64,000 nt of DNA from Octopus sinensis. Lineage: Eukaryota. The DNA is taken from contig NC_043017.1 of the NCBI RefSeq assembly GCF_006345805.1, positions 25,978,001-26,042,000 on the forward strand, in the 5' to 3' direction. Each line of letters starts with the position of its first letter. The stretch's first letter is position 1. The notes under the pieces were generated by a model. It ran no database searches. It was not told the DNA's origin and saw only the letters and a program-made list of their open reading frames with translations. Shown piece by piece: positions 9,076 to 55,575 of this stretch. Both the position numbers and the translations under genes were made by a program.

Positions 9076-9972
9076 ATCTTAGCCGAAAATTTCAGGAAAA
9101 TTTCAAGCGCTTCCATGAAAAATGTTCTTGTTACGTAAATCCCCAAATATTCCCTCGAGACTTTCTACAAAAAGGGTTAGAATACTTTTGTCATAGTTTA
9201 GGGGTGTTACTTGAAAACGACTGTTAACATTTTTTTTATAATTCATTTACGACATTTGAAGATAACGTTGAAGTGCTTGTTCTGAGTATCAGAATTTTCT
9301 TGGGTTCAAATTTATTTAATTACGCAGTGTGGTTGTTTTGGAGGTTTCCTTCTTTCAAATTTTCATGCAGGAAATTTAAATTGCATTTACCATTTTTCTT
9401 CGAACAGAATAACGACGGTTCTATTTGATTTGTTTTTAATTATTTGTTGTATGTGGACTTCATCTTTCTGGATTTCAATTCATTGGAATCTTTTATTTTC
9501 TGCTTTTGTTTCTATTGTTTCGGATTGGCAGAGTGAAAGAGATGATGTTCAAGGAAAATAGCGGTTAGAATAATAAGGTTCAGAAAGGAATTTAGCCCTT
9601 TAAAGGATTCCCAGAAAAGAGCATCGCGATAAAAAAGTCAAGTAAAGCCACATATCTAGTGAAAAGCAAGAGCAACACGTTTGGCAGAAGCAATAATAAA
9701 ACTAAATGTAATAAGATAGAGAACAACGGGAGCATAATCCTCAGCAAAATTAAGGAATACAACAATAATGGCATTGAGAAAATCTAAGGAAAAGAAACTG
9801 CGTTAAAATTCTCAAGTGTTGGCAGAAGTAATACAACGACAGAAATTAAATGATGAAGATACGACGGCGTTAATTGGAATAACTACAGAAACACCAGCGA
9901 GAACATTCACAGAGCAGCAGCAAGAATAACAATAACAACAACATCAACTGTGGCTACAATAGAATAGCAGCT

Positions 9973-10330
9973 GTGGAGGCGCAATGGCCCAGTGGTTAGG
10001 GCAGCGGACTCGCGGTCGTAGGAACGTGGTTTCGGTTCTCAGACCGAGCATTATGAGTGTTCATTGAGCGAAACACCTAAGCTCCACGAGACTCCGGCAC
10101 TTGGTGGTTCTGAAACCCCTCTGTACTCTTTCACCACAACTTTTTCTCGCTCTTTCTTCCTACTTCTGCGACGAAGCAGAGGAACCAAGGTGTAACCCAC
10201 TATGGTGTGGTAAACTTCATGGACCCTAGTCTAGATTGTGAATCCTCTGTACCCCAGGATGGTTCAGCTCACCACTCGCTAAAAATTTCCTTCTCTCGGC
10301 TAGGTCCAAGAAGCGAATTCTTCTAAGTTT
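9973..10330 (+). mobile_element. SINE family A head and body with a different 3' tail
   Basis: 9973-10168 matches 42046 onward (gtggaggcgcaatggcccagtggttagggcagcggactcgcgg); sequence after 10168 does not match the other family A copies. Confidence 0.75.
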
Positions 10331-11537: not shown

Positions 11538-11759
11538 ACTCTTTACTCTTGTAATTGTTTCAGTCATTTCTCTGTGGCCATGGTGGGGCACCGCCTTTAG
11601 TCGAGCAAATCGACCCCGGGGCTTATTCTTTGTAAGCCTAGTACTTATTCAGTCGATGTCTTTTGCCGAACCGCTAAGTTACGGGGACATAGACACACCA
11701 GCATTGGTTGTCAAGCGATGTTGGGGGGACAAACACAGGCACAAAAACATACACAGACA

Positions 11760-11791
<32 letters not shown>

Positions 11792-13659: not shown

Positions 13660-14815
13660 TTTATGTTTGACTTTTGATTTACATTTGTACAAGTTGGATC
13701 CAAGTCTCACTCAGAGATCTCAAGAGACAACAAGTTAGAATTTCATGTCGATATTATGCCTAGGGTGTCATATATTTGATTTTGTACATAGTATTGTTCT
13801 AGAGAATGTTTATGAAACCATAAGAAATTTATGAGTTTGTTTAAAACTTGAGATTAAATAGAAAATATTTTGTATAGGATATGTGTAGTCCCCGTGAGCA
13901 TTATTTCTGCTAGTCTGGGGTTTCCTGGTATCTAAGCTATGTAGCAATCAACCCCTTTTGCTATCATTCCTAGAGCACCTATGACAACAGCTATTGTTTG
14001 AGTCTTCAGGTTCCACATTTTTCTAATTTGTATTTCAAGATCTTTATATTTGCTCAGTTTTTGGTAGGTCTTGACAAATACGTTTATATCGATTAGGACT
14101 GTGATATCAATGAAGAGGCATACTTTTTGTCTGAAGTCTTTCAATATGATGTCTGGTCTATTCGCAACTATCTTTCTGTGAGTTCGAGCGGTAAAGTTCC
14201 AGAGGAGTGCGATGTGATCATTTTCAAGCAGTGGAGGTGGTTTGTGTCCCACCAGTTATTATGATGGGACAAGTCCAGTTTTTGCAAATTACCCAGTGAA
14301 TATATTGTTACAGCTCTATCATGCCTGTTGAGATACTCTGTAGCCGCAAGAAAACTGCACTTGGAGACATACACGACATGTTGGGAAGCTACCGTTCTTT
14401 AATATGTTGGCCTGGTAGTTACTTGTAGGTAGGCATTGATTTGGGCAGCTATGATAAACCCTTCTGTTTCAGATTTTAAACCAGAAGCCATTAGTCATTG
14501 ATGGGTAAGGGATTTGTCAACATCGGCATTATTCGCTCTCTTTGGGTATTTGCCATTGAGAGGTTTTTCTTGCCTTTTATCAGTAATAATATCTAAGGCA
14601 GCAGTTTTAGCACGGGTTTTCATGCGCTTAACCTATCCTGCGCTTGTTTCTCTTTTGTCTAATTCCAGAATTTGTTGTATTTGGAATTCGCTTAGATATT
14701 CCTTTGACTTTTTTTGTTACTAAGTATCATGCTTTCTTGTTTTCATGTTTTGAGACAAGTTTTAACATCCCGTTCTTAGAGATTTTCAAGTTGGTATCCA
14801 TGCCAATTATGGCAG
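13660..14815 (-). mobile_element. R4/Dong-clade non-LTR retrotransposon, 5'-truncated (zinc knuckle + RLE endonuclease + 3' UTR)
   Basis: Minus strand: KPLNGKYP..GLKSETEGFIIAAQ..RHDRA..LLWNF..RPDIIL..CLFIDITV..KLSKYKDLEIQI..VVIGALG (PD..D..K RLE motif). Flanked by (TTA)n on both sides. Confidence 0.9.
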
Positions 14816-14961: not shown

Positions 14962-15222
14962 AGTTAGAGAGCAGAGCATGCCATCAAAGTGACACTGGGG
15001 TAAAATATACGAAGCGTAGTATAACTATCATCACCACACATCTGATAAGGTTACACCGGGCACATGCATCACAACCATATGTGCGCAACATGGTGATCTC
15101 ATATCAAGATAAACAGTGCATGACCTTGCAGTTGGGGCCCAGTTTATAATTTTCTGCTGGTCCAGTAGCCCATTCAGCACAAAAGGCCATTGAATAAGGA
15201 TTATTTAAGAATGTTGAACGAA
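14962..15222 (-). mobile_element. Interspersed non-coding repeat whose 3' end runs into (TAA)n; truncated by a family B SINE
   Basis: Minus strand ends atggcatgctctgctctctaactc-aataataat. I recall this as a common octopus repeat; unverified. Confidence 0.4.
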
Positions 15223-15224
15223 CA

Positions 15225-15333
15225 GCTAAGTTACGGGGACGTAAACACGCCAGCGTCGGTTGTCAAGCGATGTTGAGGGAACAAACACTGACACACAAAC
15301 ACACACACAAACACCCACACCCACACCCCACAC

Positions 15334-15371
<38 letters not shown>

Positions 15372-15525
15372 TACGACGGGCTTCTTTCAGTTTCCGTCTA
15401 CCAAATCCACTCACAAGTCTTTGGTCAGCCTGAGGCAATAGTAGAATATACTTGCCCAAGTGGGACTGAAAACAGAGACATGTGGTTCGTAAGCAAGCTC
15501 CTTATCACACAGTCACTCCTACGCC
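15225..15525 (-). mobile_element. SINE family B, lacking its 3' tail
   Basis: Head and middle match 48354-48640. Confidence 0.8.
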
Positions 15526-16360
15526 AATATAGATAATTTTTTTACACATGCATACATACATAAATATCTATACACATACATACATTTATGCGTGTATATA
15601 TATATATATATATATATATATGCATGTTTTATATAATACAGTGGGAGTAGATGATATCAACTACCGAACTCTATTCGTTATCTCAGATTATTTCTAAGAT
15701 GTTTAAAAACGTTAAGTTAATTATCGTGCATGACATTTGACTACATAAAATGCGACTGAAGTGCAGTATATTCATATGCACACAGACACAGAAAAACACA
15801 CACACACAGACACATACACACACATGTATGCATATTATTAGCAATGTTAGTAGCAATATATTTTCACTTACAATTATTTTTCTTGTTACATTTGTTGTCG
15901 TTTTTCATGCTAGCAATGCTGTTTGCATGAAATACTTTGGATCATCAAGCCGGCTATATTTTCTTTTTTAGAATTTTGCATTTCAATTTCAAACTTGTGG
16001 ATACTACTTTGTATTTAGGCCCATCATATTTCATAAAAGAAACGCCAAAGAAATATTAATAGCGATAAAATCGATTAAACTCTTCTAACAAGTTTGCGAA
16101 CTTTCTTTTTAATGACATAATACAGGGATGAAAGCAAGAAATATCACGTTTTCCAGGACGCATAAGAGTCCTTATATTTAATATTAAAAAATTGCCTTGC
16201 GTTAAAGGAGCTCAAAGACTAGGTTTTTCTGTTAAACCATACACATTTTTCATACAGTGACAGCGTGGATATGTCATCGTAGACAATCTCTCTTTGATTT
16301 CTAGTTCCCTTTTCATTACACTCTATCTTCACTTTTGTCGGAAGCTTTTAACTTTTTGAT

Positions 16361-17341: not shown

Positions 17342-17874
17342 AAGGGGGAGGTTCGATCAAAAGGATCGTAAAGGAGAAAGAGGACAAAAATAAGGGGGGG
17401 TAAAAAAAAAGATAGATAGATTGATGAATTCGGGATATTTCTGAGAAATTGTATACAGTTTATAATATAGTGAATAACTTGTTTTCCAAAGCAGGATGTT
17501 CGCATGAATTTTGTCTTCTCGTATTACAGCCGTCGTTTATGCATCGTCTGATATTTGTCTTTGGGAAATATCTACATCACTGGCATTTATTTTCTTCTAG
17601 ACATTAAGACTTTCTATTTCAAATCGTATTTCTTTATTTGGAGAAACGGTAACATGAACGAAGCAGTCTAGATTGAATCCAGGTCAAAATTTCTGCTTAT
17701 CATTTTTTTTACACAGTAATGCGCTGTGGTGAAAATAGATAACCTCTCATATAATTTTATTATATATGCTCTATTATCCATCGTTAACTGCTTTCCGTCA
17801 TTGGCCGCAGCCTTGAATGGTTCAATGAAACAAGTCAACGCTAGGTGGTATGATTTCTTGTTTGTATTTGTCAG

Positions 17875-18125
17875 CTTCCTTAAATACTGAGAACAGTTTT
17901 TTTGTTTTGCTCGTGTTTTGCCGCTATTTGTATCAGTTTTCCTTCCTTCTGAAGTAGATATTTTTGCAGTCCTATGGTGGTTATTTTATAGTAGTTTTCC
18001 AGCTGTATAAGGCCTCTACCACCTTCTATACGTTGTATATATAGTCTTTCTATGTCAGATTTTGGGTGATGCATCCTAGATCCTTTTGTAAGACTGGCAC
18101 ATTTTTTATCGTGTTACTTTTGACG
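17875..18125 (-). mobile_element. R4/Dong-type LINE post-RT fragment
   Basis: MHHPKSDIERLYIQRIEGGRGLIQLE matches the HHP..D..RLY..R..GGRGL motif. Confidence 0.85.
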
Positions 18126-18676
18126 AATTGCTCAGTTACATGCAAGTAAAATAACACTAGCTGTTACCAATTTACCTAACAAGCCATTGTCTTGGCCATA
18201 GTTTTGCAGATCACATCTACTCAAGATGCCCCGTAATCAGACTGAACTTGAAGACACAGGGTTAAAAAATGAGCTTTTTAACTACAGAGGTGTGCCAACG
18301 CCTATTACATCCATTCTTAAAATGTTTTCCCTTGTACACTTTGTAAAGCTCAATATGAATTTATCAGTATTCTTCTTGGATTTCTGAAATGCTCAGTTAT
18401 TATTAGAATAGCAATCAACACCAAAAGCAGAGGAGAGACTGATTTTCATTAGTCTTTCTTCTGAAGGTTTTCCTAATATCAGTTATTTTCAAACTCGTGC
18501 TGCCCATGGCTCTCTGTAGTAAATCCTAAAGACACGGCCGAAGGAACAAGGAAGACAAAGAGGTTGAAAAAATTGTTTTCAAATTTTGATAAAATGTCAG
18601 GAATTTCACGTGAGTTACTAAATCAATTACATCAATACAACTACTAATAATAATGATAATCATCATGATAATAATA

Positions 18677-18774
<98 letters not shown>

Positions 18775-18795
18775 GTGATAATAATAATAATAATA

Positions 18796-18845
<50 letters not shown>

Positions 18846-18863
18846 TAATAATAATAATAATAA

Positions 18864-19670
18864 TATGGTTGAGAAGCTCAGGACTCAAAGCAGAAACAGA
18901 GGGATTTTTAATTGCAGCACAAGACCAAAGCCTCCCCACCAGAAATTACCAAAAACATGTAACTGCCAGAAATTACCCCACCAGAAATTACCAAAAACAT
19001 GTAACTGCAGAATATGTGGAGATGGACAAGAAACAATAAATCATATTATCTCTAGCTGCCCAGTCCCGGCTAAGAAGGAATATATTCACAGACATGACAG
19101 AGTTGGAACCTACATACATTGGAAGCTATGCCAACATTATGGAATAACAACAGAAAAAAGATGGTATAGGCACACACCAGAAAAGGTCACAGAAAACGAG
19201 AAAGCAACCATACTCTGGGATATGCCGATACACACAGATAGAGAAATTAAGGCCAACAGACCAGATATAGTTGTCAGAGATCATGAAGAAAAAAAATGCT
19301 TTCTAATTGATGTATCAATACCGGCTGATGACACCGTGTCTCTAAAAGAAATGGAGAGAACTCTCAAATAAAAAGACCTGGAAATAGAGGTAACTAGAAT
19401 CTGGAATCTGAAAACAGAAACAATTCCTATCATAGTAGGTGCATTAGGCATGATAAAAAAATATTCAGACAAATACATAACAAAAACACCAGAGGACTTA
19501 CAAACACATATAACATACAGAAAATTGCACTACTAGGACTGCACACATCCTACGCAGAACACTCTCCATACAATAACCATCAGAGCATCACAACAAATCA
19601 CAGCACATACCCAAGGCACACAGAGCTGCACTCGGTAGTGAAGTGAAAGCACGCTATAAAAATAAAACTA

Positions 19671-19673
<3 letters not shown>
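18864..19673 (+). mobile_element. R4/Dong-clade LINE, 5'-truncated 3' end with CCHC knuckle, RLE domain and 3' UTR
   Basis: [53 protein letters not shown]; has an internal ~40-bp duplication; embedded in (TAA)n on both sides. Confidence 0.92.
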
Positions 19674-19747
<74 letters not shown>

Positions 19748-19884: not shown

Positions 19885-20280
19885 AGTAGGATCCTTTCTA
19901 CTATGAGCACAAGGCCAGAAATGTTGTGGGAGGGGACTAGTCGATTATATCAACCCCAGTGCATAACTGATACTAAATTTATCAACCCTGCTAAATCGAT
20001 CTCGGAGGAATTTGATTTCAGAACGTAGCGGCAGACGAAATACCGATTTCTTTACTACCCACAAGGGGTTAAACATAGAGTGGACAAACAAGGAGAAACA
20101 AACGGATGATTAAGTCGATTATATCGACGCCAGTGCGTAAGTGGTACTTAATTTATCGACCCCGAAAGGATGAAAGGCAAAGTTGACCTCGGCGGAATTT
20201 GAACTCAGAACGTAACGGCAGACGAAATACCACAAAGAATTTTTGCCCGGCGTACTAACGATTCTGCCATTTGCCACATT
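19885..20280 (-). mobile_element. Two tandem SINE family C units
   Basis: Reverse complement matches 29243-29660 (atcgaccccgaaaggatgaaaggcaaagttgacctcggcggaatttgaactcagaacg). Confidence 0.8.
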
Positions 20281-20304
20281 AATATTATTATTATTATTAT
20301 TATT

Positions 20305-20406
20305 CAGTAGTTTTATTTTTTTAGCGTGCTTTCACTTCACTACCGAGCGCAGCTCTGTGTGCCTTGGGTATGTGATGTGATTTGTTGTGATGCTCTGATG
20401 GTTATT

Positions 20407-20409
<3 letters not shown>
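20305..20409 (-). mobile_element. ~105-bp 3' UTR-only insertion of the same R4/Dong family as 18864-19673
   Basis: Near-exact reverse complement of 19569-19673; flanked by (TTA)n on both sides. Confidence 0.88.
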
Positions 20410-20444
<35 letters not shown>

Positions 20445-27407: not shown

Positions 27408-27448
<41 letters not shown>

Positions 27449-27858
27449 GCGCAGGAGTGGCTGTGTGGTAAGTAGATTGTTTACCAACCACATGGTTCCG
27501 GGTTCAGTCCCACTGCGTGGCACCTTCGGCAAGTGTCTTCTACTATAGCCTCAGGCCTCGGGCCGGCCAAAGCCTTGTGAATGGATTTGGTAGACGGAAA
27601 CTGAAAGAAGCCCGTCGTATATATGTATATATATGCGTGTGTGTGTTTGTGTGTCTGTGTTTGTCCCCCTAGCATTGCTTGACAACCGATGCTGATGTGT
27701 TTATGTCCCTGATAACTTGCAGTTCAGCAAAAGACACCAATAGAATAAGTACTGGGCTTACAAAAGAATAAGTCCCGAGGTCGAGTTGCTCGATTAAAGG
27801 CGGTGCTCCAGCATGGCCGCAGTCAAATGACTGAAACAAGTAAAAGAGGGTAAAGAGT
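27243..27858 (+). mobile_element. SINE family B: head-only copy (27243-27378) followed by a full copy (27447-27858)
   Basis: Both begin aggcg(t/c)aggagtggctgtgtg; the second has the complete tail. Confidence 0.85.
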
Positions 27859-28288
27859 ATATACGATTTGTTTCTACTCTTTCTATCTACTGTATGCCGC
27901 AATTTTTTCTCTCATACGTCGACAATTGCCAAACAGAAGCTAGTATATAAAATAAAAGACTTTATTATTCACGATGTGCTGCGAGGAGAGACAGACCGAA
28001 CTGATGAAGGCAAAGTTATGGGAAGGATACATATTTGACCAAACGGCTGCTCCTGCACCTTTCCTTATTCAAACATTGCAATATTCAACGAGATCTGGAC
28101 AAGCAATTCATTTGCAAACTTCCCAGCAGCTGTCAATGGAGAAATAAGTTTTAGTTGAATAGAGAATCAGTGCAGAAGTCTTTGGAAATTGGCTTCTATA
28201 AAACATGGAATTAATGGGTGCGCCACCTGAATGATAAATGATACATTCATCTTAATGGAACACCTATGCATAAGTACATGCATACACT

Positions 28289-29954: not shown

Positions 29955-29985
<31 letters not shown>

Positions 29986-30084
29986 GTCATAAATAAATAT
30001 AAATATATATATATATTACATATGTACATGCTTATGTATACATATAAATATATTTACATATAGATGTATATATATATATAAATA

Positions 30085-30180
<96 letters not shown>

Positions 30181-30316
30181 ATATATATGCATAACTTACA
30201 AGATAAGGGCAGAAGAAAAATTCTAATGCCAGATACGCGACGACGAAACAAAAATTGTCGATAACCAGTAGTAATTTATGCGTCTCGAAACAAACGATAG
30301 AAATCTCTATAAAATT

Positions 30317-30389
30317 CGTTATTACCGTATTGGTCCAATTTCGGGGTTAATTCACAAGAAATTTTCCCCTCTTCAGCGGCACATACGCG
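30317..30389 (-). ncRNA. Type I hammerhead ribozyme (complete core)
   Basis: Minus strand: UGCCG-CUGAAGA-GGGG(19 nt)CCCC-GAAA-UUGGACCAAUA-CGGUA. CUGANGA and GAAA cores and stems I, II and III all pair. Confidence 0.85.
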
Positions 30390-30755
30390 AGATATACATG
30401 AAATACTTATTCATACCCACGGAAGAAGCAAGCACCAAGTTCCGAGCAGAGTTAAGTACCCCAAATATATCAAAATAGAAAAATCTTCGGCGCACCTCGA
30501 GATACGTGTGATTCGAACTAGAAACTTTCACAGAGTGATAGAATCCGGAAGTGAACACTAATCTATTTATAATTGATATAGGATAAAAATTTTTTCGGGA
30601 AGAAATTTTATCAATGGCCAGCATATCAAAAAATGCCTTTAAAGGTAAAATTTATACATAATTTACAAGATAAGGGCAGAAGAAAAATTCTAATGCCACA
30701 TACGCCGAAACAAAAGATTGTCGATAACCAGTAAATTTATGCGTCTCGAAATAAA

Positions 30756-30807
30756 CCGGCTGAAGAGGGGAAAATTTCTTGTGACTTAACCCCGAAATCG
30801 GACCCGA
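30756..30807 (+). ncRNA. Partial hammerhead copy lacking the cleavage triplet and 3' stem I
   Basis: CUGAAGA 30760-30766, GGGG/CCCC stem II, GAAA 30794-30797, UCGG/CCGA stem III, then a switch to another part of the monomer. Confidence 0.7.
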
Positions 30808-31012
30808 AAATGTTTTTATCCTATATCAATTATAAATAGATTAGTGTTCACTTCCGGATTCTATCACTCTGTGAAAGTTTCTAGTTCGAATCACACGTGC
30901 CTCGAGGTGCGCCGAAGATATTTCTATTTTGATATATTTCGGGTACTTACGTCTGCTCGGGACTTGGTGCTTGCTTCTTCTGTGGGTATGAATAAGTATT
31001 TCATTTATATCT

Positions 31013-31085
31013 CGCGTATGTGCCGCTGAAGAGGGGAACATTTCTTGTGAATTAACCCCGAAATTGGACCAATACGGTAATAACG
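31013..31085 (+). ncRNA. Type I hammerhead ribozyme (complete core), predicted cleavage after AUA at 31074
   Basis: UGCCG 31021-31025 pairs with CGGUA 31075-31079; CUGAAGA 31026-31032; GGGG 31033-31036 / CCCC 31056-31059; GAAA 31060-31063; stem III AUUG/CAAU. Confidence 0.87.
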
Positions 31086-31310
31086 AATTTTTTAGAGATT
31101 TCTATCGGTTTGTTTCGAGACGCATAAATTTACTGGTTATCGACAATATTTTGTTTCGGTATATGTGGCATTAGAATTTTTCTTCTGCCCTTATCTTGTA
31201 AATTATGTATAAATTTTACCTTTAAAGGCATTTTTTGATATGCTGGGCATTGATAAAATTTTTTCCCGAAACAAATTTTATCGTATACCAATTATATATA
31301 TGCATAATAT

Positions 31311-31397
<87 letters not shown>

Positions 31398-31516
31398 AAT
31401 ATTTAAAATTGAGGGAGATAAATTAAATTAATTTAAATTTTAATATCAATTTAAAACCAGTAGTCCAGCATTCAAAAAATCTGAGGAGTCAGAAGAAAAT
31501 TCAAATATAGTGTATA

Positions 31517-31920
31517 TTGGCAGGGCTGGCCTGCTAGGTAGCCGGCCAGAATGCTAGAAGAAGATCATCAACGATCGAACTACAAGGGAAATTCTCTAGA
31601 GGAAGAATTCAGCGAACACCAGAACCAACTTTGGCGGGCAGGACATATGAAAAATTAAATAAATAACAGACTTAAATGCATACCTCGGTTTCGGTCTTAA
31701 CAAAAGAATTACTTGCATAATCAAGTGTCCGTGACTTCTTCAGCACATTCGGTCCTCGTGATGCAAACTGAAAGACTAACCCAGCCCTCGTGTCAAGACA
31801 GACACGTGCTTAGTCTTACTGATTACATCGGGAATAAAATTTCAAATGTCCCTTGTAGTTTGATCGGTGATGATCTTCTTCTAGCATTCTGGCCGGCTAC
31901 CTAGCAGGCCAGCCTGCCAA
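31517..31920. mobile_element. MITE-like element with ~75-bp terminal inverted repeats, flanked by TA
   Basis: TA|ttggcagggctggcctgctaggtagccggccagaatgctagaagaagatc ... gatcttcttctagcattctggccggctacctagcaggccagcctgccaa|TA. Confidence 0.7.
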
Positions 31921-33804: not shown

Positions 33805-34184
33805 ATACTACTACTACTACTACTGCTGCTGCTGCTCTGCTGTTACTAATAGTGCTGCTACTGTTGCTGCTACTCTATTGTTACTGAGGGGGCCGCTGCT
33901 GATGCTTCCACTCCTACTACTACTCCTACTACTACTACTACTACTACCACTACTACTACTACTTCTTCTACCACTTCTACTACTACTACTACTACTCCTA
34001 CTTCTACTGCTGCTGCTACTACTACAACAACTACTACTACTACTACTATTACTACTACTACTACTACTACTACTACTCCTACTACTACTACTACTACTAC
34101 TTCTTCTACCACTTCTACTACTACTACTACTACTCCTACTTCTACTGCTGCTGCTACTACTACAACAACTACTACTACTACTAT

Positions 34185-34230
<46 letters not shown>

Positions 34231-35297: not shown

Positions 35298-35644
35298 TAA
35301 TAATAATAATGATGATGATGATGAGGATGATGATGATGATGATGATAATTATTATTATTTGTACTTTAGGCACAAGGCCTTGAAAACTTTTGGGTAAGGG
35401 GGCTTTTCGATTACATCGACTCCAGTGCGTAAAGGGTACTCTTTTCATTGACCCCCGCAGAGTCGATCTCAGAGCATAGCGCCTGACGAAATACTGCTAA
35501 GCATTTTGCCCGGCGTGCTAACGAGTTTGCCAGCTCGTCTCTTTAATAATAATAATAATATAATAAAAATAATAATAATACTAATAATGAATAATTGATA
35601 ATAATAATAATAAAAATAATAATAAGAATAATAAGAATAATAAT

Positions 35645-35692
<48 letters not shown>

Positions 35693-35707
35693 TATATAAA
35701 TAATAAT

Positions 35708-35756
<49 letters not shown>

Positions 35757-36540
35757 TAATGATAATAATAATAATAATAATAATAATTTCTTCTATAGGC
35801 ACAAGGCTTGAAACTTTGAGGGAAGGGGTCAGTTGATTAGACCGATACCAGTACGCAGCTGGTACTTAATTTATAGTCCCCGACTGGATGAAAGACCTAG
35901 TCGACCTCAGCGGAATTTGAACTCAGAGCGTAAGCATTTCGTCTGGCTTGCTAACGATTCTGCCAGCTCAACGCCTTAATGATAATAATAACAATGATGA
36001 TGTCTCCAAATTTAGCACACAACCAGCAATTCTGGCCCAGAAATTATGAAGAGCAACATCGACCTCGCGCGAAATGCTGCTAAGCAATTTGACCAAGTTA
36101 TCGCCTTGATAAACCTCACTGCTTTAAGCGCATGGCTTGAACGTTTGAGATGAGGTGTGAATCTTGGTAACATCGATCCCAAAAGGATAAAACGTGAAAG
36201 TCAACCTAGGTGGAATTTGAATTCATAATATAAAGAGCCGGAAGAAATGTCGCTAAATATTGACGGTTCTGCTCGCCGACTTCATAAAAACACCACCACC
36301 AACAACATCAACAACAGCAATAATAATATTTTTTACTATAAGTACAAGACATGAAATTTTATGGGGGGGGGGCATAAGTCAAATACGTCGGACCCAGTAC
36401 GTAACTGATACTTATTCCGTCGAGGTCGAAAGACGAACGGCAAAGTCAGCATCGGCAGAATTTTGACGCGCAACATAAAGACAGACAAAATGTCGCTAAG
36501 CATTTGACCTGGCGCGGTAACAATTCAGCTACCTCGCCGA
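35200..36540 (-). mobile_element. Cluster of at least four degraded SINE family C copies interleaved with (TAA)n/(TGA)n tracts
   Basis: Repeated aagcattt(t)gcccggcgtgctaacga..tgccagctc and ggcacaaggc motifs at ~35370-35540, 35800-35980, 36010-36280 and 36340-36540. Confidence 0.7.
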
Positions 36541-37037: not shown

Positions 37038-37700
37038 CGAGGGACGTTCAATAAGTAATACCTATGATCCACTTGCAGTTATTTGATCCTGCTGAAATTT
37101 TGCATGTGCATTTATTTCTATCTCTATAGATTAAGTGGCTAATTACAGCTCTGAACTAATTGTGGTTTCTGATTTACAGGTATTTGAACTGAGTCAGTGT
37201 GAAATGGAGCCTGTTGAGTGTAGAGCAGTGATCCGGTTTTTGTATTTGAAAGGACGCACACCACGGGAGACTTTTGATGAAATGAAAGTAACTTATGGTG
37301 ATGATGCCCCATCATATGACCTTGTAAAACGCTGGCATCGTGAATTCAATTTGAGGCTGCCACTTTGGAAGATCGACGCATAACTATTCGCCAAATAGCC
37401 CCTGAGGTCAAGATTAGTACCGGGTCTGTGGAAACTATCATTCATGACCATTTGCATATGCAAAAGGTGTCTGCCAGATGGATTCCCAGGCTGCTCACAC
37501 CTTTCCAGAAGCAAGAACGCGTCGAGTGTCGAGGATGAATTTGGAGAGGTGCCAAGATGAGTCAAAGATTTTCGAAGGACTGATTACACAGGATGAAACC
37601 TGGGTCCATCACTATGATCCAGAGACCAAAGCCCAGTCAATGCAGTGAAAGCACCGTGACTCACTTCCTCCAAAGAAGGCAAGGGTGCAGCCCTCCGCTG
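37038..37700 (+). mobile_element. Internally deleted mariner transposon (irritans/Himar-like), left TIR and broken transposase
   Basis: TA|cgagggacgttcaataagtaat; ATG at 37204 gives MEPVECRAVIRFLYLKGRTP..SYDLVKRWHREF, then KVSARWIPRLLT and ITQDETWVHHYDPETK (WVPR motif and first catalytic D). No right TIR seen. Confidence 0.88.
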
Positions 37701-40962: not shown

Positions 40963-41346
40963 GATGGAAGCACTCCGTCGGTTACGACGACGTGGCTTCC
41001 GATTGATCCGAAGCAACGGAACAGCCTGCTCGTGAAATTAACAAGTAAGTGGCTGAGCACTCCACAGACACGTGTACCCTTAACGTAGTTCTCGGGGATA
41101 TTCAGCGTGACACAGAGAGTGACAAGGCCGGCCCTTTGAAATACAGGTACAAAGAAACAGAAGTAAGAGTGAAGAAAGTTGTGGTGAAAGAGTACAGCAG
41201 GGATCACCACCATCCCCTGCCGGAGCGTCGTGGAGCTTTAGGTGTTTTCGCTCAATAAACACTCACAACGCCCGGTCTGGGAATAGAAACCGCGATCCTA
41301 TGACCGCGAGTCCGCTGCCCTAACCACTGGGCCATTGCGCCTCCAC
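40963..41346 (-). mobile_element. Full-length SINE family A with 11-bp target-site duplication
   Basis: TSD tcctgtgtatg at 40952-40962 and 41347-41357; tRNA-like head with A/B boxes. Confidence 0.93.
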
Positions 41347-42045
41347 TCCTGTGTATGACATATATTTTGGAAGGAATTCGTCAAACAAATGTCGTATGAG
41401 AAAGTATTGCTCAGTGAGAGGAAACACAGAAAACCTGATTACCATTCGTATTTCTTATTGATACAATGAATCTTACGATACAGACCACTTTTCCAGTTGG
41501 CAGTTATTGACGATTACCATTCACATGATTCTCTCAAATGTAGTAATTATTTATTTACCATAATTTTGAATTAATCAGGCATTATCTCTTAGAGTCAAGA
41601 TTTCAAATATATGATTCTTTATTATTAGGATGACATTTCGGGATACGTTTGAGAGGCTGTATGTAGCTCGTTTGATAAAAAAACAGGTAGAACGTTTCAA
41701 CTTCAAATGGTCGGTTTAAATGATAAATGTTTAACAGTGAAAGAAAGCTAAAGAGAAATAATATGGAAAATATAAAATTGTTCCCCTGTTTATCATGAAA
41801 GGACATTGATAAGACTCTTTTAATAAAGACATGATGATGAACATACATAATGAATACCAACATCCAATGTCTGCTGATACAGTTCAAAATCAACGGTATA
41901 CATAGATTCTCTTGTTGTTGACTTCTGATTGGATTTCTTTAAAAAAAAAAAATCGTCAAACTTGCACCGGTCTGTTTATTTAATATATGGTGAAACCTCC
42001 GAAGAAGACTGCCAATATGTCTTTTATGTTTGTAATCAGTACGGT

Positions 42046-42432
42046 GTGGAGGCGCAATGGCCCAGTGGTTAGGGCAGCGGACTCGCGGTCATAGGATCGC
42101 GGTTTCGATTCCCAGACCGGACGTCGTGAGTGTTTATTGAGCGAAAACACCTAAAAGCTCCACGAGGCTCCGGCAGGGGATGGTGGTGATCCCTGCTGTA
42201 CTCTTTCACCACAACTTTCTCTCACTCTTACTTCCTGTTTCTGTTGTACCTGTATTTCAAGGGGCCGGCCTTGTCACTCTGTGTCACATTGAATATCCCC
42301 GAGAACTACGTTAAGGGTACACGTGTCTGTGGAGTGCTCAGCCACTTACACGTTAATTTCACGAGCAGGCTGTTCCATTGATTCGGATCAACCGGAACCC
42401 TCATCGTCGTAACCGACGGAGTGCTTCCACAC
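42046..42432 (+). mobile_element. Full-length SINE family A with 12-bp target-site duplication
   Basis: TSD aatcagtacggt at 42034-42045 and 42433-42444; head tggcccagtggttagg (A box) ... ggtttcgattccc (B box). Confidence 0.95.
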
Positions 42433-44175: not shown

Positions 44176-44558
44176 TGGAAGCACACCGTCGGTTACGACG
44201 ACGAGGGTTCCGGTTGATCCGAATCAACAGAACAGCCTGCTCGTGAAATTAACGTGTAAGTGGCTGAGCACTCCACAGACACGTGCACCCTTAACGTAGT
44301 TTCCGGGATATTCAGCGTGACACAGAGAGTGACAAGGCCGGCCCTTTGAAATACAGGTACAACAGAAACAGGAAGTAAGAGTGAGAGAAAGTTGTGGTGA
44401 AAGAGTACAGCAGGGATCACCACCATCCCCTGCCGGAGCGTCGTGGAGCTTTAGGTGTTTTCGCTCAATAAACACTCACAACGCCCGGTCTGGGAATCGA
44501 AACCACGATCTATGACCGCGAGTCCGCTGCCCTAACCACTGGGCCATTGTGCCTCCAC
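44176..44558 (-). mobile_element. Full-length SINE family A
   Basis: Highly similar to 40963-41346. Confidence 0.92.
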
Positions 44559-44589
44559 TCCCTTGAATTAATATATATGTAGTAAACGT

Positions 44590-48080: not shown

Positions 48081-49060
48081 ATGACTTCTTCGCCGGGAGG
48101 CTCTCCTGAGAATGACACTTTTGAACAAACCAAAGCAATAATAAATGATGAAATGCAACCAAATATAAATGAAAACCATAATGAAGCAAATAGTTTCAAC
48201 TTAACGAAACTAGCACTCCCGATATCCAAGAAAACAGAGACAAACGATGAAAAATAAATTTTCCGGTTGAGTCTAACTGCGGAAATGGAAAGAAACGAAG
48301 ACATACCAAACTTAATCAGATATATCTCAACATAATATACTTTAGTGAACAAAAGGCGCAGGAGTGGCTGTGTGGTAAGTAGCTTCCTAACATACCACAT
48401 GGTTCCGGGTTCAGTCCCACTGCGTAGCATCTTGGGCAAGTGTCTTCTGCTATAGCCCCGGGCCGACGAATGCCTTGTGAGTGGATTTCGTAGACGGAAA
48501 CTGAAAGAAGCCCGTCGTATATATGTATATATATATATATATATATATGCGTGTGTGTGTGTGTGTCTGTGTTTGCCCCCCTAGCATTGCTTGACAACCG
48601 ATGCTGGTGTGTTTACGTGCCCGTCACTTAGCGGTTCGGCAAAAGAGACCGATAGAATAAGTACTAGGCTTACAAAGTATAAGTCCCGGGGTCGATCTGC
48701 TCGACTAAAAAGCGGTGCTCCAGCATGACCGCAGTCAAAATGACTGAAACAAGTAAAAGAGTAAAAGAGTAAAAGGTAAAATTGATTAAGAAGTTGTCTG
48801 CTGAGATTTGAATTCTGTTGTGTGGACGCTCCCTGAGGATGAAGTATGCTAGCCCAATACGTAGATATGGAAGGAGAGGAGTAGACGTCGGGAGTTGAGT
48901 AGAGGTCATCGGAACGTGCGATTCGACAGTGGCGACGAGGATTTCGTAGCTCACACAGCCACTGTGTATTATTGCGATGTAACAAATTTCATGTCAAAAT
49001 TACAAGGCGAAACATATATTGCAGAGCAATACTTACCCAAATCGAGCATAAAAATATGTA
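48081..49060 (+). pseudogene. Possible decayed LINE ORF1 (gag-like) split by a SINE insertion
   Basis: With SINE 48354-48775 removed and one frameshift allowed: MTSSPGGSP..IFRLSLTAEMER..VKLIKKLS..MKYASPIRRYGRRGVDVG..QISCQNYKAKHILQSNTYP, which ends in a degenerate CCHC-like segment. Inference. Confidence 0.35.
48354..48775 (+). mobile_element. Full-length SINE family B
   Basis: Head, CORE-like segment, internal (TA)n(TG)n and (gagtaaaa)n tail. Confidence 0.92.
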
Positions 49061-49065
49061 AAATG

Positions 49066-49473
49066 TTTACTCTCTTTTACTATTTTACTTGTTTCAATCA
49101 TTTGACTGCGGCCATGCTGGAGCACCACCTTTAGTCGAGCAAATCGACCCCGGGACTTATTCTTTGTAAGCCTAGTACTTATTCTATCGGTCTCTTTTGC
49201 CGAACCGCTAGGTGATGGGGACGTAAACACACCAGCATCGGTTGTCAAGCAATGTTAGGGGGAGAAACACACTTATATATATATATATATATATATACAT
49301 ACATATATATGACAGGCTTCTTTCAGTTTCCGTCTACCAAATCCACTCACAAGGCATTGGTCGGCCCGGGGCTATAGCAGAAGACACTCGCCCAAGATGC
49401 CACGCAGTGGGACTGAACCCGGAACCATGTGGTTGGTTAGCAAGCTACTTACCACACAGCCACTCCTGCGCCT
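49066..49473 (-). mobile_element. Full-length SINE family B
   Basis: Reverse complement of 48354-48775. Confidence 0.92.
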
Positions 49474-49579
49474 GTTTGTGAGTGAATATTCATGAAGTTT
49501 ACAATCTTTCGTTCCCGTCTGATGAACCACGGAAGCTACCAAAGGAAAGTGATACAATAGAATCTAGGAGAACATTCAT

Positions 49580-49745
49580 AAACATACACACACTGCCACG
49601 CACACACACACACATACACACACACACACACATACACACACACACACGCGCACACATACACACACTGCCACGCACACACACACACACACACACCACACAC
49701 ATACACACACACACACCGCACACATACACACACTGCCACGCACAC

Positions 49746-49778
<33 letters not shown>

Positions 49779-50403
49779 ACACACCCAACGCGGCACACAT
49801 ACACCCACCTGCCACGCACACCACACACACACCCACACACAACACACATCACACACACACACACCACCGCCACATACACACACTGCCACGCACACACACC
49901 AACCCCACACACACACACACACACACACACCACACACACGCGCACACATACACACACTGCCACCACACCCACACAACCACACCACATACACACACACACA
50001 TACGCTCACACATACACACACTGCCACGCACCACACACACACCACACACACACACACACACACCACACACACACATACCAACACACACCCCGCACACATA
50101 CACACACTGCCACGCACACCACACCACACACACACACCACACACACATACACACACACACACGCGCACACATACACACACTGCACGCACACCACACACAC
50201 ACACACACACACAACACCAACACATACACACACACACCCGCACACACATACACACACTGCCACGCACACACACACACCACACACCCACACCCCATACACA
50301 CACACCACACGCGGCACACAACACACACACACACACACACACACCCACACCACAACACACACACACACAACACACACACACCGCGCACACCTACACACAC
50401 TGC

Positions 50404-50440
<37 letters not shown>

Positions 50441-50553
50441 CACACACACACACGCGCAACACATACACACACTTCCACGCACACAAACACACACACAACA
50501 CACACACACACACACTACACACACACACAACGCGCACACATACACACAGCTGC

Positions 50554-50592
<39 letters not shown>

Positions 50593-50793
50593 ACACTGCC
50601 ACGCACACACACACACACACACACACACCATACATACACACACACACACCGCGCACACATACACAACATCCACGCACACACACACACACACAACCACACC
50701 CACACATACACACACACACACACGCGCACACATACACACACTGCCACGCACCACACACACCACACACACACACAGCATACACACACACACTGC

Positions 50794-50830
<37 letters not shown>

Positions 50831-50841
50831 ACACTGCCACG

Positions 50842-50872
<31 letters not shown>

Positions 50873-50935
50873 ACACTGCCACGCACACACACACACACAC
50901 ATACACACACACACACGCGCACACAAACACACACA
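49580..50935. repeat. CA-rich minisatellite (unit ~cacatacacacactgccacg(ca)n)
   Basis: Motif ctgccacgcac recurs about 15 times. Confidence 0.92.
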
Positions 50936-51009
50936 TGTATATTTATATATAAGTATGCATTGTGCATTTTTATGTATTACTTATACCTGTCTTATATATG
51001 TATCTGCCA

Positions 51010-53097
51010 CTGTGTGTTTGTGTGTGTTTGTGTGTGTTTGTGTGTGTTTGTGTGTGTTTGTGTGTGTTTGTGTGTGTGTTTGTTGTGTTTTTGTGGTGGT
51101 GTTTTTGTTGTTTTGTGTGTGTTTGTGTGTGTTTGTGTGTGTTTGTGTGTGTTTGTGTGTGTTTGTGTGTGTTTGTGTGTGTTTGTGTGTGTTTGTGTGT
51201 GTTTGTGTGTGTTTGTGTGTGTTTGTGTGTGTTTGTGTGTGTTTGTGTGTGTTTGTGTGTGTTTGTGTGTGTTTGTGTGTGTTTGTGTGTGTTTTTGTGT
51301 GTTTGTGTGTGTTTGTGTGTGTTTTTGTGTGTTTGTGTGTGTTTGTGTGTGTTTGTGTGTGTTTTGTGTGTGTTTTGTGTGTTTGTGTGTGTTTGTGTGT
51401 GTTTGTGTGTGTTTGTGTGTGTTTGTGTGTGTTTGTGTGCGTTTGTGTGCGTTTGTGTGCGTTTGTGTGCGTTTGTGTGCGTTTGTGTGCGTTTGTGTGC
51501 GTTTGTGTGCGTTTGTGTGTGTTTGTGTGTGTTTGTGTGTGTTTGTGTGTGTTTGTGTGTGTTTGTGTGTGTTTGTGTGTGTTTGTGTGTGTTTGTGTGT
51601 GTTTGTGTGTGTTTGTGTGCGTTTGTGTGCGTTTGTGTGCGTTTGTGTGCGTTTGTGTGCGTTTGTGTGCGTTTGTGTGCGTTTGTGTGTGTTTGTGGTG
51701 GTGTTGTGTGTGGTTTGTGTGTGTTTGTGTGTGTTTGTGTGTGTTGTGTGTGTTTGTGTGTGTTGTGTGTGTTTGTGTGTGTTTGTGTTGTTTGTGTGTG
51801 TTTGGTGTGTTTTGTGTGTTGTGTGTGTGTTTTGTTGTGGTTTGTGTGTGTTTGTGTGTGTTGTGTGTGTTTTGTGTGTGTTTTGTGTGTGGTTTGTGTG
51901 TGTTTGTGTGCGTTTGTGTGCGTTTGTGTGCTTTGTGTGCGTTTGTGTGCGTTTGTGTGCGTTTGTGTGCGTTGTTGTGCGTTTTGTGTGCGTTTGTGTG
52001 TGTTTGTGGTGTGTTTGTGTGTGTTTGTGTGTGTTTGGTGTGTTGTTTGTGTGTGTTTGTGTGTGTTTGGTGTGTTTGGTGTGTGTTTGTTGTGTTTGTG
52101 TGTGTTTGTGGTGTTTGTGTGTGTTTGTGTGCGTTTGTGTGCGTTTGTGTGCTTTGTGTGCGTTTGTGTGTGTTTGTGTGTGTTTTTGTGTGTTTTTGTG
52201 TGTTTTTGTGTGTTTTTGTGTGTGTTTTGTGTGTGTTTTTGTGTGTTTTTGTGTGTTTGTGTGTGTTTTTGTGTGTTTTTGTGTGTTTGTGTGTGTTTGT
52301 GTGTGTTTTTGTGTGTTTTTGTGTGTTTTTGTGTGTGTTTTGTGTGTGTTGGTTTTTGTGTGTTGTTTGTGTGTGTTTGTGTTGTGTTTGTGTGTGTTTG
52401 TGTGTGTTTGTGTGCTCATTTGTGTGCGTTTGTGTGCGTTTGTGTGCTTTGTGTTCGTTTGTGTGCGTTTGTGTGCGTTTGTGTGTGTTTGTGTGTGTTG
52501 TGTGTGTTGTGTGTGTTGTGGTGTGTTTGTGTGTGTTTGTGTGTGTTTGTGTGCGTTTGTGTGGCGTTGTGTGCGTTTGTTTGCGTTTGTGTGTCGTTTG
52601 TGTGCGTTGTGTGCGTTGTGTGCGTTTGTGTTGCGTTTGTGTGTGTTTTGTGTGTGTTTTGTGTGTTTGTGTGTGTTTGTTGTGTTTGTGTGTGTTTTGT
52701 GTGTGTTTGTGTGTGTTTGTGTGTGTTTGGTGTGTGTTTTTGTGTGTGTTTGTGTGTGTTTGTGTGTGTTTGTGTGTTTTGTTGTGTTGTTTGTGTTGTT
52801 GTGGTGTGTGTGTGTGTGGTTTGTTTGTGTGTTTGTGTGGTGTTTGTGTGTGTTTGTGTGTGTGTTTGTGTGTGTTTGTGTGTGTGGTTTGTGTTGTGTG
52901 TGTTTGTGTTGTTGTGTGTGTTTGTGTGTGTTTGTGTGGTGGTGTGTTTTGTGTGTGTTTGTGTGTGTTTGTGGTGTGTTTTTTGGTGTGTTGTGTGGTT
53001 TGTTGTGTGTTTGTGTGTGTTTGTGTGTGTGTTTGGTGTGTTTTTGTGTTGTTTGTGTCGTGTTTGTGTGTGTTTGTGTGTGTTTGTGTGCGTTTGT
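51010..53097. repeat. GT-rich 10-mer tandem array (gtttgtgtgt / gtttgtgtgc)
   Basis: Regular 10-bp period from 51120 to 51690, increasingly indel-rich afterwards. Confidence 0.95.
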
Positions 53098-53384
53098 GTA
53101 CGTATATATTATATGTCCATTTGGATTATATTTGTTTATCATATACATCTTTCATGATACAAACACGAAATTATTACACAAATGTGAGTGAGAACACTGA
53201 GATATTTTTGGTATCTAACATATGTCAGATACTGCGAGCGCTGCTTCTGATTGGTCAATCCATGGTGATGACTTGAGGTCACGGTGACGGCACTACTTTT
53301 GTCATTCATAAGTTACAACTAAACGTGAAGGATTTAGTTATTGGGTTAATAAAATATGGTCGTTTATTCGTGTGTAATAAATAA

Positions 53385-55543: not shown

Positions 55544-55575
<32 letters not shown>

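What the first reader, a model, noticed from the sequence alone, without database searches (positions are those of the whole stretch)
30317..31085. Canonical type I hammerhead ribozymes inside a ~465-bp multimeric repeat: candidate cephalopod retrozyme
Seen: two complete copies (30317-30389 minus, 31013-31085 plus) read UGCCG-CUGAAGA-GGGG..CCCC-GAAA-UUGGACCAAUA-CGGUA, with every core nucleotide present, three pairing stems and an AUA cleavage triplet. Stem I extends through bulges (CGUAU-G-UGCCG / CGGUA-AUA-A-CG). Stem III (AUUGG-A-CCAAU) is nearly self-complementary. Established: tandem monomers each with one type I hammerhead define newt satellite 2, Schistosoma Sm-alpha, cricket pDo500 and non-LTR retrozymes, which are cut into monomers and can circularise; weak palindromic stem III favours dimeric cleavage. 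Inference: this is a non-coding retrozyme-like family. I know of none described from octopus but cannot search.
Basis: partly seen in the sequence, partly recalled or inferred. Interest (0 to 1): 0.92.

Follow-up and report, generated by a model that had tools for sequence, protein, structure and literature searches.

The report
Hammerhead-ribozyme retroelement inserted head-to-head
A 1.1-kb insertion in a (TA)n microsatellite holds two inverted, slightly more than unit-length copies of a ~465-nt non-coding repeat, each with a sequence-perfect type I hammerhead motif; it is most likely a dead copy of a known kind of mobile element (animal "retrozyme" / non-autonomous Penelope-like element).

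Summary
The motif is real and at the stated coordinates. Two 59-nt cores (31021-31079 +, 30381-30323 -) satisfy the field's descriptor (CUGANGA / GAAAY / RUH, helices of 5, 4 and 4 bp). They are the only two hits in the window, against about 0.0005 expected per 64 kb. No covariance model supports it: Rfam gives no hammerhead hit even at E<=10, and my own model from four validated retrozyme ribozymes aligns it in register at only 6.7 bits.

The "multimeric repeat" is not a head-to-tail array. It is one insertion (30195-31295) of two head-to-head arms, 1.2 and 1.1 units of a 462-467-nt period. The arms are joined at a CCGG microhomology and flanked by the 12-mer ATATATGCATAA, which occurs nowhere else in the window. 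The insertion sits in (TA)n. This matches published Penelope-like integration.

Each strand has only one intact hammerhead, plus a truncated third copy at 30756-30804. This locus therefore cannot release unit-length or circular RNA.

No other copies could be retrieved, and the cephalopod origin could not be verified. Verdict: a probable new member of a known kind. Interest is moderate to low.

The parts
29956..30182 (.). Left flank: (TA)n microsatellite, the target of the insertion
   Evidence: TRF period 2, 118 copies
30183..30194 (+). Left copy of the putative target-site duplication ATATATGCATAA. It overlaps a 7/8 microhomology with the element's own ...ATACATAA.
   Evidence: The exact 12-mer occurs only twice in 64 kb, at both ends of the insertion; sequence
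30195..30758 (-). Minus arm, about 1.2 units read 5'->3' from 30758 down to 30195. It runs from unit position ~304 to the unit end, then from position 1 to ~412. Its 3' end faces the left flank.
   Evidence: blastn of arrays and direct repeat with spacing 467; three-way alignment A4
30317..30387 (-). Intact type I hammerhead motif; predicted cleavage between 30328 and 30327 on the minus strand
   Evidence: Descriptor hit 30381-30323 with helices 5/4/4; constrained fold -11.4 kcal/mol
30756..30759 (.). Centre junction: palindromic CCGG shared by the 5' ends of both arms (microhomology join)
   Evidence: Sequence comparison of the junction with full units
30756..30804 (+). Truncated third hammerhead copy. 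It keeps part of the helix I 5' strand, CUGAAGA, helix II and GAAA. It lacks the 3' half of helix III, the cleavage site and the helix I 3' strand. It is joined to unit position 1 at ..GGACC|CGAAAA.., skipping ~194 nt of the unit.
   Evidence: Direct repeat D4 at 93%; blastn; junction sequence
30803..31295 (+). Plus arm, about 1.07 units (unit = 30803-31264, then the first ~32 nt of a second unit). Its 3' end faces the right flank.
   Evidence: blastn self-match 31265-31300 = 30803-30838; inverted repeats I1 and I2 at 94-95%
31015..31085 (+). Intact type I hammerhead motif; predicted cleavage after A31074
   Evidence: Descriptor hit 31021-31079; model R1 aligns it end to end in register at 6.7 bits; constrained fold
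31296..31307 (+). Right copy of the putative target-site duplication ATATATGCATAA
31308..31402 (.). Right flank: (TA)n microsatellite
   Evidence: TRF 31293-31402, period 2

Best explanation
The region 30195-31295 is a single, old retrotransposition event of a ~465-nt non-coding element that carries one type I hammerhead ribozyme per unit. That makes it a non-LTR retrozyme, i.e. a non-autonomous passenger of Penelope-like element (PLE) machinery.

In the source family, multimeric transcripts would be cut by the hammerhead after the AUA triplet into unit-length RNAs. Cutting probably occurs as a dimer through the near-palindromic helix III. The unit-length RNAs can then circularise (inferred from the class, not shown here).

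A longer-than-unit RNA, either circular or an uncleaved multimer, was then reverse-transcribed from both nicked ends of an ATATATGCATAA site inside a (TA)n tract. Each end was primed at a TA-rich microhomology. The two cDNAs met head-to-head and joined at a CCGG microhomology, and one of them made a template jump.

Shown: the anatomy, the junctions, the 12-bp duplication and the motif. Inferred: the priming scheme, catalysis and circular RNA. This locus is a dead copy. It has one intact hammerhead per strand, so no unit-length RNA can be excised. A read-through transcript would fold into a ~410-bp hairpin.
For: The motif meets CUGANGA/GAAAY/RUH, the criterion printed in the supplement of PMC7229834, with helices of 5/4/4 bp. 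It gives the only 2 hits in the window. Controls gave 1 equally good hit in ~119 Mb.

Helix III is unstable as a hairpin but forms a -10.9 kcal/mol self-duplex. All four validated retrozyme hammerheads behave the same way, at -6 to -14.8 kcal/mol.

The hammerhead differs at 1 of 71 positions between the arms, against 31 of 347 elsewhere (Fisher p=0.016).

Both arms read through the cleavage site and exceed one unit with a 462-467-nt head-to-tail period and no ORF between. The template was therefore a short multimeric or circular RNA.

The arrangement is head-to-head with 5' truncation, the target is (TA)n, and the exact 12-mer flanks both ends. These are the published PLE hallmarks (PMC8557442). 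The retrozyme-PLE link is described in PMC7229834 and in bioRxiv 10.64898/2026.07.22.740005.

GC is 35-36%. The unit's ORFs have no homologue.
Against: There is no Rfam hammerhead hit at any threshold. My model R1 scores 6.7 bits, below the noise level in 64 kb.

The hammerhead fold (-11.4) is less stable than the MFE fold (-14.5 kcal/mol), and z-scores are ~0. The circular unit RNA is no more structured than shuffles (z 0.05 and -0.12), against -0.9 to -3.0 for validated retrozymes.

No other copy was found in the window, metagenomes, viral contigs or 5.8/1.84 billion predicted proteins. None of these collections is a cephalopod genome.

This is only one independent occurrence. The descriptor would give roughly 10-20 chance hits in a 2.5-Gb genome (extrapolated). 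The conservation test is weakened by clustered indels. (TA)n covers ~4% of the window, so the target preference is only p~0.05.
Confidence: 0.65

Rival explanations
1. This is a chance hammerhead-like motif inside an unrelated short interspersed or inverted repeat. The RNA never self-cleaves and the element has nothing to do with ribozymes.
For: No covariance-model support. The hammerhead fold is not the MFE fold and the z-score is ~0. It is a single independent occurrence. About 10-20 equally good chance hits are expected per 2.5-Gb genome, and ~475 loose ones. The 19-nt 'loop 2' is unlike the validated retrozyme ribozymes. No other copies were retrieved.
Against: The per-window expectation is ~0.0005. 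Helix I extends by 5 further pairs. The motif lies in exactly the kind of element known to carry type I hammerheads, one with PLE-type insertion anatomy. It is the best-conserved part of the unit.
Confidence: 0.17
2. These are heavily 5'-truncated copies of the pseudo-LTR / 3' end of an autonomous Penelope-like element, not a separate non-autonomous retrozyme family.
For: PLE pLTRs carry hammerheads. PLE insertions are strongly 5'-truncated, partially tandem and often have an inverted copy. A degraded, RT-like reading frame lies at 63008-64000, though it is unverified.
Against: Both arms repeat head-to-tail with a 462-467-nt period and no ORF between units. An autonomous PLE would repeat at 3-4 kb. 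PLE hammerheads are described as minimal variants, whereas this one has full-length helices I and II.
Confidence: 0.12
3. This is a DNA-level fold-back (palindromic) duplication or an assembly artefact of a single copy.
For: There are inverted arms of 308 and 195 nt at 94-95%. Such PLE structures are known to trouble assemblies.
Against: The arms are asymmetric: inner ends are at unit positions ~304 and ~219, and outer ends at ~412 and ~32. One arm has an internal jump. The arms differ at 7.7% of columns including indels. A 12-bp direct duplication flanks the whole insertion. A fold-back artefact would be symmetric and nearly identical.
Confidence: 0.04

Closest known systems
Non-LTR retrozymes of animals (Cervera & de la Pena 2020, PMC7229834), e.g. 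the Mytilus galloprovincialis 350-390-nt retrozyme
   Same: Both have a type I hammerhead with a CUGANGA/GAAAY/RUH core, and a helix III that is weak as a hairpin but palindromic. Both are non-coding, AT-rich (35-36% GC) units of a few hundred nt that repeat head-to-tail. Both lack LTR/PBS/PPT, have a TSD longer than 4 bp, and occur in a mollusc-like genome context.
   Different: The unit is 462-467 nt, slightly above the 170-400 nt given for invertebrates. There is no sequence similarity to the mussel or coral units. Helix II continues past an AA/AA internal loop into a second short stem (19 nt between GGGG and CCCC) instead of a 5-7-nt loop. The unit RNA is not more self-paired than shuffles. 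This locus has two inverted arms rather than a tandem array. Expression and circularity are unknown.
Penelope-like element insertions (Craig et al. 2021, PMC8557442) and their non-autonomous derivatives (Li, Clavereau & Pollet 2026, bioRxiv 10.64898/2026.07.22.740005)
   Same: Shared features are partial tandems, an inverted 5'-truncated copy placed head-to-head, a (TA)n microsatellite target, and a hammerhead in the repeated part.
   Different: There is no RT/GIY-YIG ORF. No 30-40-bp 'tail' was recognised. A clear 12-bp duplication is visible, whereas TSDs are often undiscernible for PLEs in microsatellites.
Newt satellite 2 / axolotl HHR_Amex retrozymes; Schistosoma Sm-alpha
   Same: All have a type I hammerhead once per ~330-350-nt unit. 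In the amphibian elements the weak, palindromic helix III makes cleavage dimer-dependent.
   Different: Those occur as very large tandem arrays (up to 126,247 motifs in axolotl). Here helix III is longer, at 4 bp plus a triloop, or 10 bp with a central A.A mismatch as a dimer.
L1 twin priming (from my own knowledge, not tested here)
   Same: There are two cDNA segments with their 5' ends meeting in the middle, joined by microhomology, and the whole is flanked by one TSD.
   Different: The template repeats (circular or multimeric), so both arms exceed unit length. There is no poly(A).

Membership tests
Hammerhead ribozyme, type I | Conserved catalytic core C3-U4-G5-A6-N7-G8-A9, G12-A13-A14, A15.1-U16.1, H17 (CUGANGA / GAAAY / RUH) | tested here: met
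   Both full copies read CUGAAGA ... GAAAU ... AUA. The criterion is as printed in the supplement of PMC7229834.
Hammerhead ribozyme, type I | Three helices around the core, with helix I open (5' and 3' ends) and helices II and III closed | tested here: met
   Helices are 5/4/4 bp. A constrained fold is accepted at -11.4 kcal/mol. R1 aligns all three helices in register.
Hammerhead ribozyme, type I | Significant match to a covariance model of the family (Rfam RF00163 gathering score) | tested here: not met
   No hammerhead family is listed at gathering or at E<=10. My own 4-sequence model scores 6.7 bits, with a 15-nt insertion in loop 2.
Hammerhead ribozyme, type I | Loop 1 - loop 2 tertiary contacts of canonical natural hammerheads | not testable with these tools
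   Helix I has a G bulge after 5 bp and an A bulge after 8 bp. Helix II has an AA/AA internal loop after 4 bp. The geometry is plausible, but there is no consensus to score against. The active mussel ribozymes also lack the archetypal nucleotides.
Hammerhead ribozyme, type I | Site-specific self-cleavage | not testable with these tools
   This needs in vitro transcription.
Non-LTR retrozyme | Head-to-tail tandem repeats of a short unit, each unit with one type I hammerhead, so that two ribozymes in one orientation bracket a unit | tested here: inconclusive
   A head-to-tail period of 462-467 nt is present in both arms. Each arm is only 1.07-1.25 units and holds one intact hammerhead; the third copy is truncated.
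Non-LTR retrozyme | Non-coding, low GC (<45-50%), no LTR/PBS/PPT | tested here: met
   GC is 35-36%, but the window background is 33.7%. ORFs are <=92 aa without homologues.
Non-LTR retrozyme | TSD, when present, longer than 4 bp | tested here: met
   The 12-mer ATATATGCATAA lies at both ends and is unique to them in the window.
Non-LTR retrozyme | Unit RNA highly self-paired | tested here: not met
   The circular fold gives z = 0.05 and -0.12 with 59-64% paired. Validated units give z -0.9, -1.3 and -3.0 with 66-71% paired. The criterion discriminates weakly.
Non-LTR retrozyme | Many genomic copies, and expression as linear and circular unit-length RNA | not testable with these tools
   No animal genome or transcriptome collection could be searched by DNA. 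Indirect searches were empty.
Penelope-like element (insertion signature) | Partial tandem plus inverted 5'-truncated copy adjacent at the 5' end | tested here: met
   The arms meet 5'-to-5' at 30758/30759.
Penelope-like element (insertion signature) | Insertion bias for microsatellites, notably (TA)n | tested here: met
   (TA)n lies on both sides. (TA)n covers ~4% of the window, so chance is ~0.05.
Penelope-like element (autonomous) | ORF with PLE reverse transcriptase and GIY-YIG endonuclease | tested here: not met
   There is no such ORF in or next to the element. It would therefore be non-autonomous.

The most novel reading that the evidence does not exclude
The unit may represent a hammerhead lineage with an extended, two-part helix II that current covariance models miss. 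Cephalopod (or related) genomes would then hold a sizeable, unannotated family producing ~465-nt circular RNAs. Head-to-head insertions like this one would double as long-hairpin loci that feed dsRNA pathways (small RNAs or A-to-I editing) acting on the family.
Probability: 0.15. Interest if true: 0.55.

Novelty: new member of a known kind. Interest (0 to 1): 0.35.

Why it matters
If confirmed, it would add a cephalopod-type genome to the animals carrying non-LTR retrozymes. More usefully, it is a cleanly resolved single insertion: 12-bp TSD, (TA)n target, head-to-head arms each longer than one unit, and microhomology joins. Such an insertion ties a hammerhead-bearing short element to Penelope-type integration. 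It also points to a template that was circular or multimeric, because both arms read through the cleavage site. In addition, Rfam-based annotation can miss hammerheads whose helix II is extended, so counts such as the 235 loci in the giant squid may be underestimates.

Tried and rejected
Rfam was negative at gathering on 64 kb, and at E<=10 on 1.2 kb and 111 nt; only noise hits appeared.

My own covariance model R1 was built from coral, mussel and two axolotl retrozyme hammerheads. MAFFT misaligned one axolotl row, and two re-alignments (A2, A3) were worse and were dropped. With filters off, R1 does not list the sites in 64 kb. On 91 nt it aligns the site correctly at 6.7 bits.

Three routes to other copies were empty. 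Spurious-ORF searches used the sense 83-aa ORF and the antisense 86-aa stretch against 1.84 billion representatives. Two metagenome pattern scans and one viral scan were run. blastn against the mussel and coral retrozyme units showed chance-level similarity only.

Organism identification failed. The LINE tail is 90% identical to a protein from a Logan contig of SRR7158634 and 79% identical to one from GCA_024449705.1. Neither accession appears in the paper library, and labelled hits reach only 60% (sea cucumber, corals).

The RT-like frame at 63008-64000 gave no Pfam, PDB or word-based protein hit.

I considered using divergence between successive units to separate a circular template from a heterogeneous multimer. 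The three copies differ from each other by similar amounts, so this was not decisive.

Full report
OBSERVATION

On the plus strand, 31015-31085 reads:

CG-UAU-G-UGCCG / CUGAAGA / GGGG-AACAUUUCUUGUGAAUUAA-CCCC / GAA / AUUG-GAC-CAAU / A | CGGUA-AUA-A-CG

- The reverse complement of 30317-30387 is identical except for one A/C change in the helix II distal part.
- The predicted scissile bond follows A31074 on the plus strand. On the minus strand it lies between 30328 and 30327.
- The motif satisfies the criterion used by the laboratory that defined animal retrozymes: CUGANGA / GAAAY / RUH with perfect helix topology (supplement of PMC7229834).

CHANCE

I wrote a descriptor requiring the core, helix I >=4 bp, helix II >=3 bp and helix III >=2 bp.

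- It finds exactly two sites in the 64-kb window, the two reported, each with helices of 5, 4 and 4 bp.
- 300 dinucleotide shuffles of the window gave one hit.
- 100 Mb of first-order Markov sequence gave 19 loose hits and none as good as the observed one.
- The per-window expectation is therefore about 0.0005 for a hit of this quality. That extrapolates to some 10-20 chance hits in a 2.5-Gb genome.
- The two copies are duplicates of one repeat, so they count as one independent occurrence.

COVARIANCE MODELS DO NOT SUPPORT IT

- Rfam 15 lists no hammerhead family at the gathering score on the window. It also lists none at E<=10 on 1.2 kb or on 111 nt.
- I built model R1 from four experimentally validated retrozyme hammerheads: coral, mussel and two axolotl. 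The sequences came from the supplement read (alignment A1, model).
- With filters off, R1 does not list the sites in 64 kb.
- On 91 nt, R1 aligns the plus copy end to end, with core and all helices in register, but scores only 6.7 bits. It has to insert 15 nt in loop 2, and the helix sequences differ from the small training set.
- The negative is therefore explicable, but it remains a negative.

ENERGETICS

- The hammerhead fold costs -11.4 kcal/mol, against -14.5 for the MFE fold. In the MFE fold the core pairs with the 5' strand of helix III.
- Helix III alone does not form a stable hairpin. As a self-duplex it gives -10.9 kcal/mol: 10 bp with a central A.A mismatch.
- The four validated retrozyme ribozymes behave the same way. 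Their hairpins are 0 kcal/mol and their duplexes -6.0 to -14.8 kcal/mol.

ANATOMY OF THE LOCUS

The repeat occurs only at 30183-31300 in the window. It is not a head-to-tail multimer.

- Read in ribozyme sense, the minus arm runs from 30758 down to 30195. It covers unit position ~304 to the unit end, then position 1 to ~412, which is about 1.2 units with a 467-nt period.
- The plus arm starts with a truncated hammerhead (30756-30804). It then jumps at ..GGACC|CGAAAA.. to unit position 1 (30803) and runs to 31295, which is 1.07 units with a 462-nt period.
- The two arms meet 5'-to-5' at a palindromic CCGG (30756-30759) that both can claim.
- Their 3' ends face outwards and end in TA-rich parts of the unit (...UAUGUAUAAAU and ...CAAUUAUA).
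- The exact 12-mer ATATATGCATAA occurs twice in the whole window, at 30183-30194 and 31296-31307, immediately outside the two arms and in direct orientation.
- Beyond the 12-mers lie (TA)n tracts of 233 and 110 bp.
- I read this as one insertion into a (TA)n-embedded ATATATGCATAA site with a 12-bp target-site duplication.
- The arms differ at 32 of 418 aligned columns. Only 1 of 71 differing columns lies within the hammerhead, against 31 of 347 outside (Fisher one-sided p=0.016). The test is weakened by a cluster of indels at 31146-31165.

HOW IT MOST LIKELY AROSE AND WORKS

Published descriptions of Penelope-like elements list the following: strong 5' truncation, partial tandems, an inverted 5'-truncated copy adjacent at the 5' end, (TA)n targets, and hammerheads in the repeated part (PMC8557442). 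Animal non-LTR retrozymes are short, AT-rich, non-coding tandem units with one type I hammerhead. They are expressed as circular RNAs and are proposed, and recently argued on phylogenetic grounds, to be non-autonomous PLE derivatives (PMC7229834; bioRxiv 10.64898/2026.07.22.740005).

The locus fits that picture:

- Both arms read straight through the cleavage site.
- Both arms exceed one unit with a ~465-nt period and no ORF between units.
- The template was therefore a short RNA that was either circular or an uncleaved multimer, not a 3-4-kb autonomous element.

Priming from both nicked target ends at TA microhomologies, joining of the two cDNAs at CCGG, and one template jump would give exactly this structure. 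That scheme is my inference. The hammerhead's role is taken from the class and is not shown here: cutting multimeric transcripts to unit length, probably as dimers, followed by circularisation.

WHAT THIS LOCUS CANNOT DO

- Each strand carries only one intact hammerhead, and the third copy lacks its cleavage site. No unit-length RNA can therefore be released from here.
- A read-through transcript of 30195-31295 folds into a ~410-bp near-perfect hairpin (-700 kcal/mol). This would bury both ribozymes in double-stranded RNA.
- At 5-8% divergence between copies, this is an old, dead insertion.

FEATURES THAT DO NOT FIT WELL

- The circular unit RNA is no more stable than its shuffles: z = 0.05 and -0.12, with 59-64% paired. 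The validated mussel, axolotl and coral units give z = -0.9, -1.3 and -3.0, with 66-71% paired.
- At 462-467 nt the unit exceeds the 170-400 nt quoted for invertebrates. It lies within the 51-972 bp range reported for families in the 2026 preprint.
- Helix II is unusual. After 4 bp there is an AA/AA internal loop and then a second short stem.

OTHER COPIES AND ORGANISM

- No collection on hand holds animal genomes searchable by DNA.
- Indirect routes were empty: spurious ORFs of the unit against 5.8 and 1.84 billion predicted proteins, two metagenome pattern scans and one viral scan.
- The window is 33.7% GC and full of microsatellites, LINE tails, a mariner fragment and SINE-like repeats.
- A LINE tail is 90% identical to a protein from a Logan contig of run SRR7158634 and 79% identical to one from assembly GCA_024449705.1. 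I could not resolve either accession to a species. Labelled relatives reach only 60% (sea cucumber, corals).
- An invertebrate origin is likely. 'Octopus' is unverified.

NOVELTY

- Retrozymes are described from many animal phyla, including molluscs (mussel).
- 235 Rfam Hammerhead_1 loci were reported in the giant squid genome (PMC6962438).
- No paper in the searchable library links 'retrozyme' with a cephalopod.
- This would be a new member of a known kind.
- Its modest extra value has two parts. First, the insertion is cleanly resolved and links a hammerhead-bearing short element to PLE-type integration. Second, it shows that an extended helix II escapes Rfam.

RIVALS

- A chance motif in an unrelated repeat: 0.17.
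- Truncated pLTR of an autonomous PLE: 0.12. The 465-nt head-to-tail period argues against it.
- A fold-back duplication or assembly artefact: 0.04. Asymmetric arms, 7.7% divergence and the flanking duplication argue against it.

Noticed in passing
window 63008-64000 (+): One reading frame, broken by in-frame stops, carries a string that recalls reverse-transcriptase motifs: KDHK..P.LRLI, FDIASFYPSI, DVPMGS, LYRDDCLF, FLDV..YHKPS. From memory these resemble Penelope-like RTs. Pfam, PDB and the word-based protein search gave nothing, so it is unverified. It runs off the window end.
   Followed up: partly
window 30195-31295: A read-through transcript would form a ~410-bp near-perfect RNA hairpin (-700 kcal/mol). 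This is a possible substrate for small-RNA or A-to-I editing pathways.
   Followed up: partly
window 37135-37380 (+): Fragment of a Mos1/mariner-type transposase N-terminus (Pfam HTH_48, E=1.9e-8).
   Followed up: partly
window 18865-19704 (+) and 20278-20411 (-): A LINE tail (weak zf-RVT match) is 89% identical in DNA to a Logan contig of SRR7158634 and 78% to a contig of GCA_024449705.1. A 134-bp inverted piece of the same element lies 0.6 kb downstream. Other LINE-tail-like ORF pieces lie at 2370-2886, 13935-14398 and 17671-18113.
   Followed up: partly
window 11538-11791, 15219-15636, 27445-27859, 48349-48775, 49071-49479, 54246-54665, 55356-55805, 58005-58205: A ~420-bp interspersed repeat family has at least 8 copies at 80-92% identity and looks SINE-like. 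ARAGORN finds no tRNA-like head anywhere in the window.
   Followed up: no
window 40965-41365, 42043-42429 (inverted), 44176-44576: Three copies of a ~400-bp repeat at 94% identity lie within 3.6 kb. More diverged pieces lie at 9972-10168 and 1191-1352.
   Followed up: no
window 49582-53099: A 3.5-kb block of (AC)n followed by a 10-bp TGTGTGTTTG array (207 copies) produces artefactual ORFs of up to 1264 aa. (TA)n tracts are frequent (eight tracts, ~4% of the window), and there are long (TAA)n and (ACT)n arrays at 18645-18865, 33910-34230 and 35544-35787.
   Followed up: no
window 31689-31743 (-): A CUGAAGA...GAAA core-like string lies 400 bp from the element. It lacks helices I and III and does not pass the descriptor, so it is a chance match.
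   Followed up: yes
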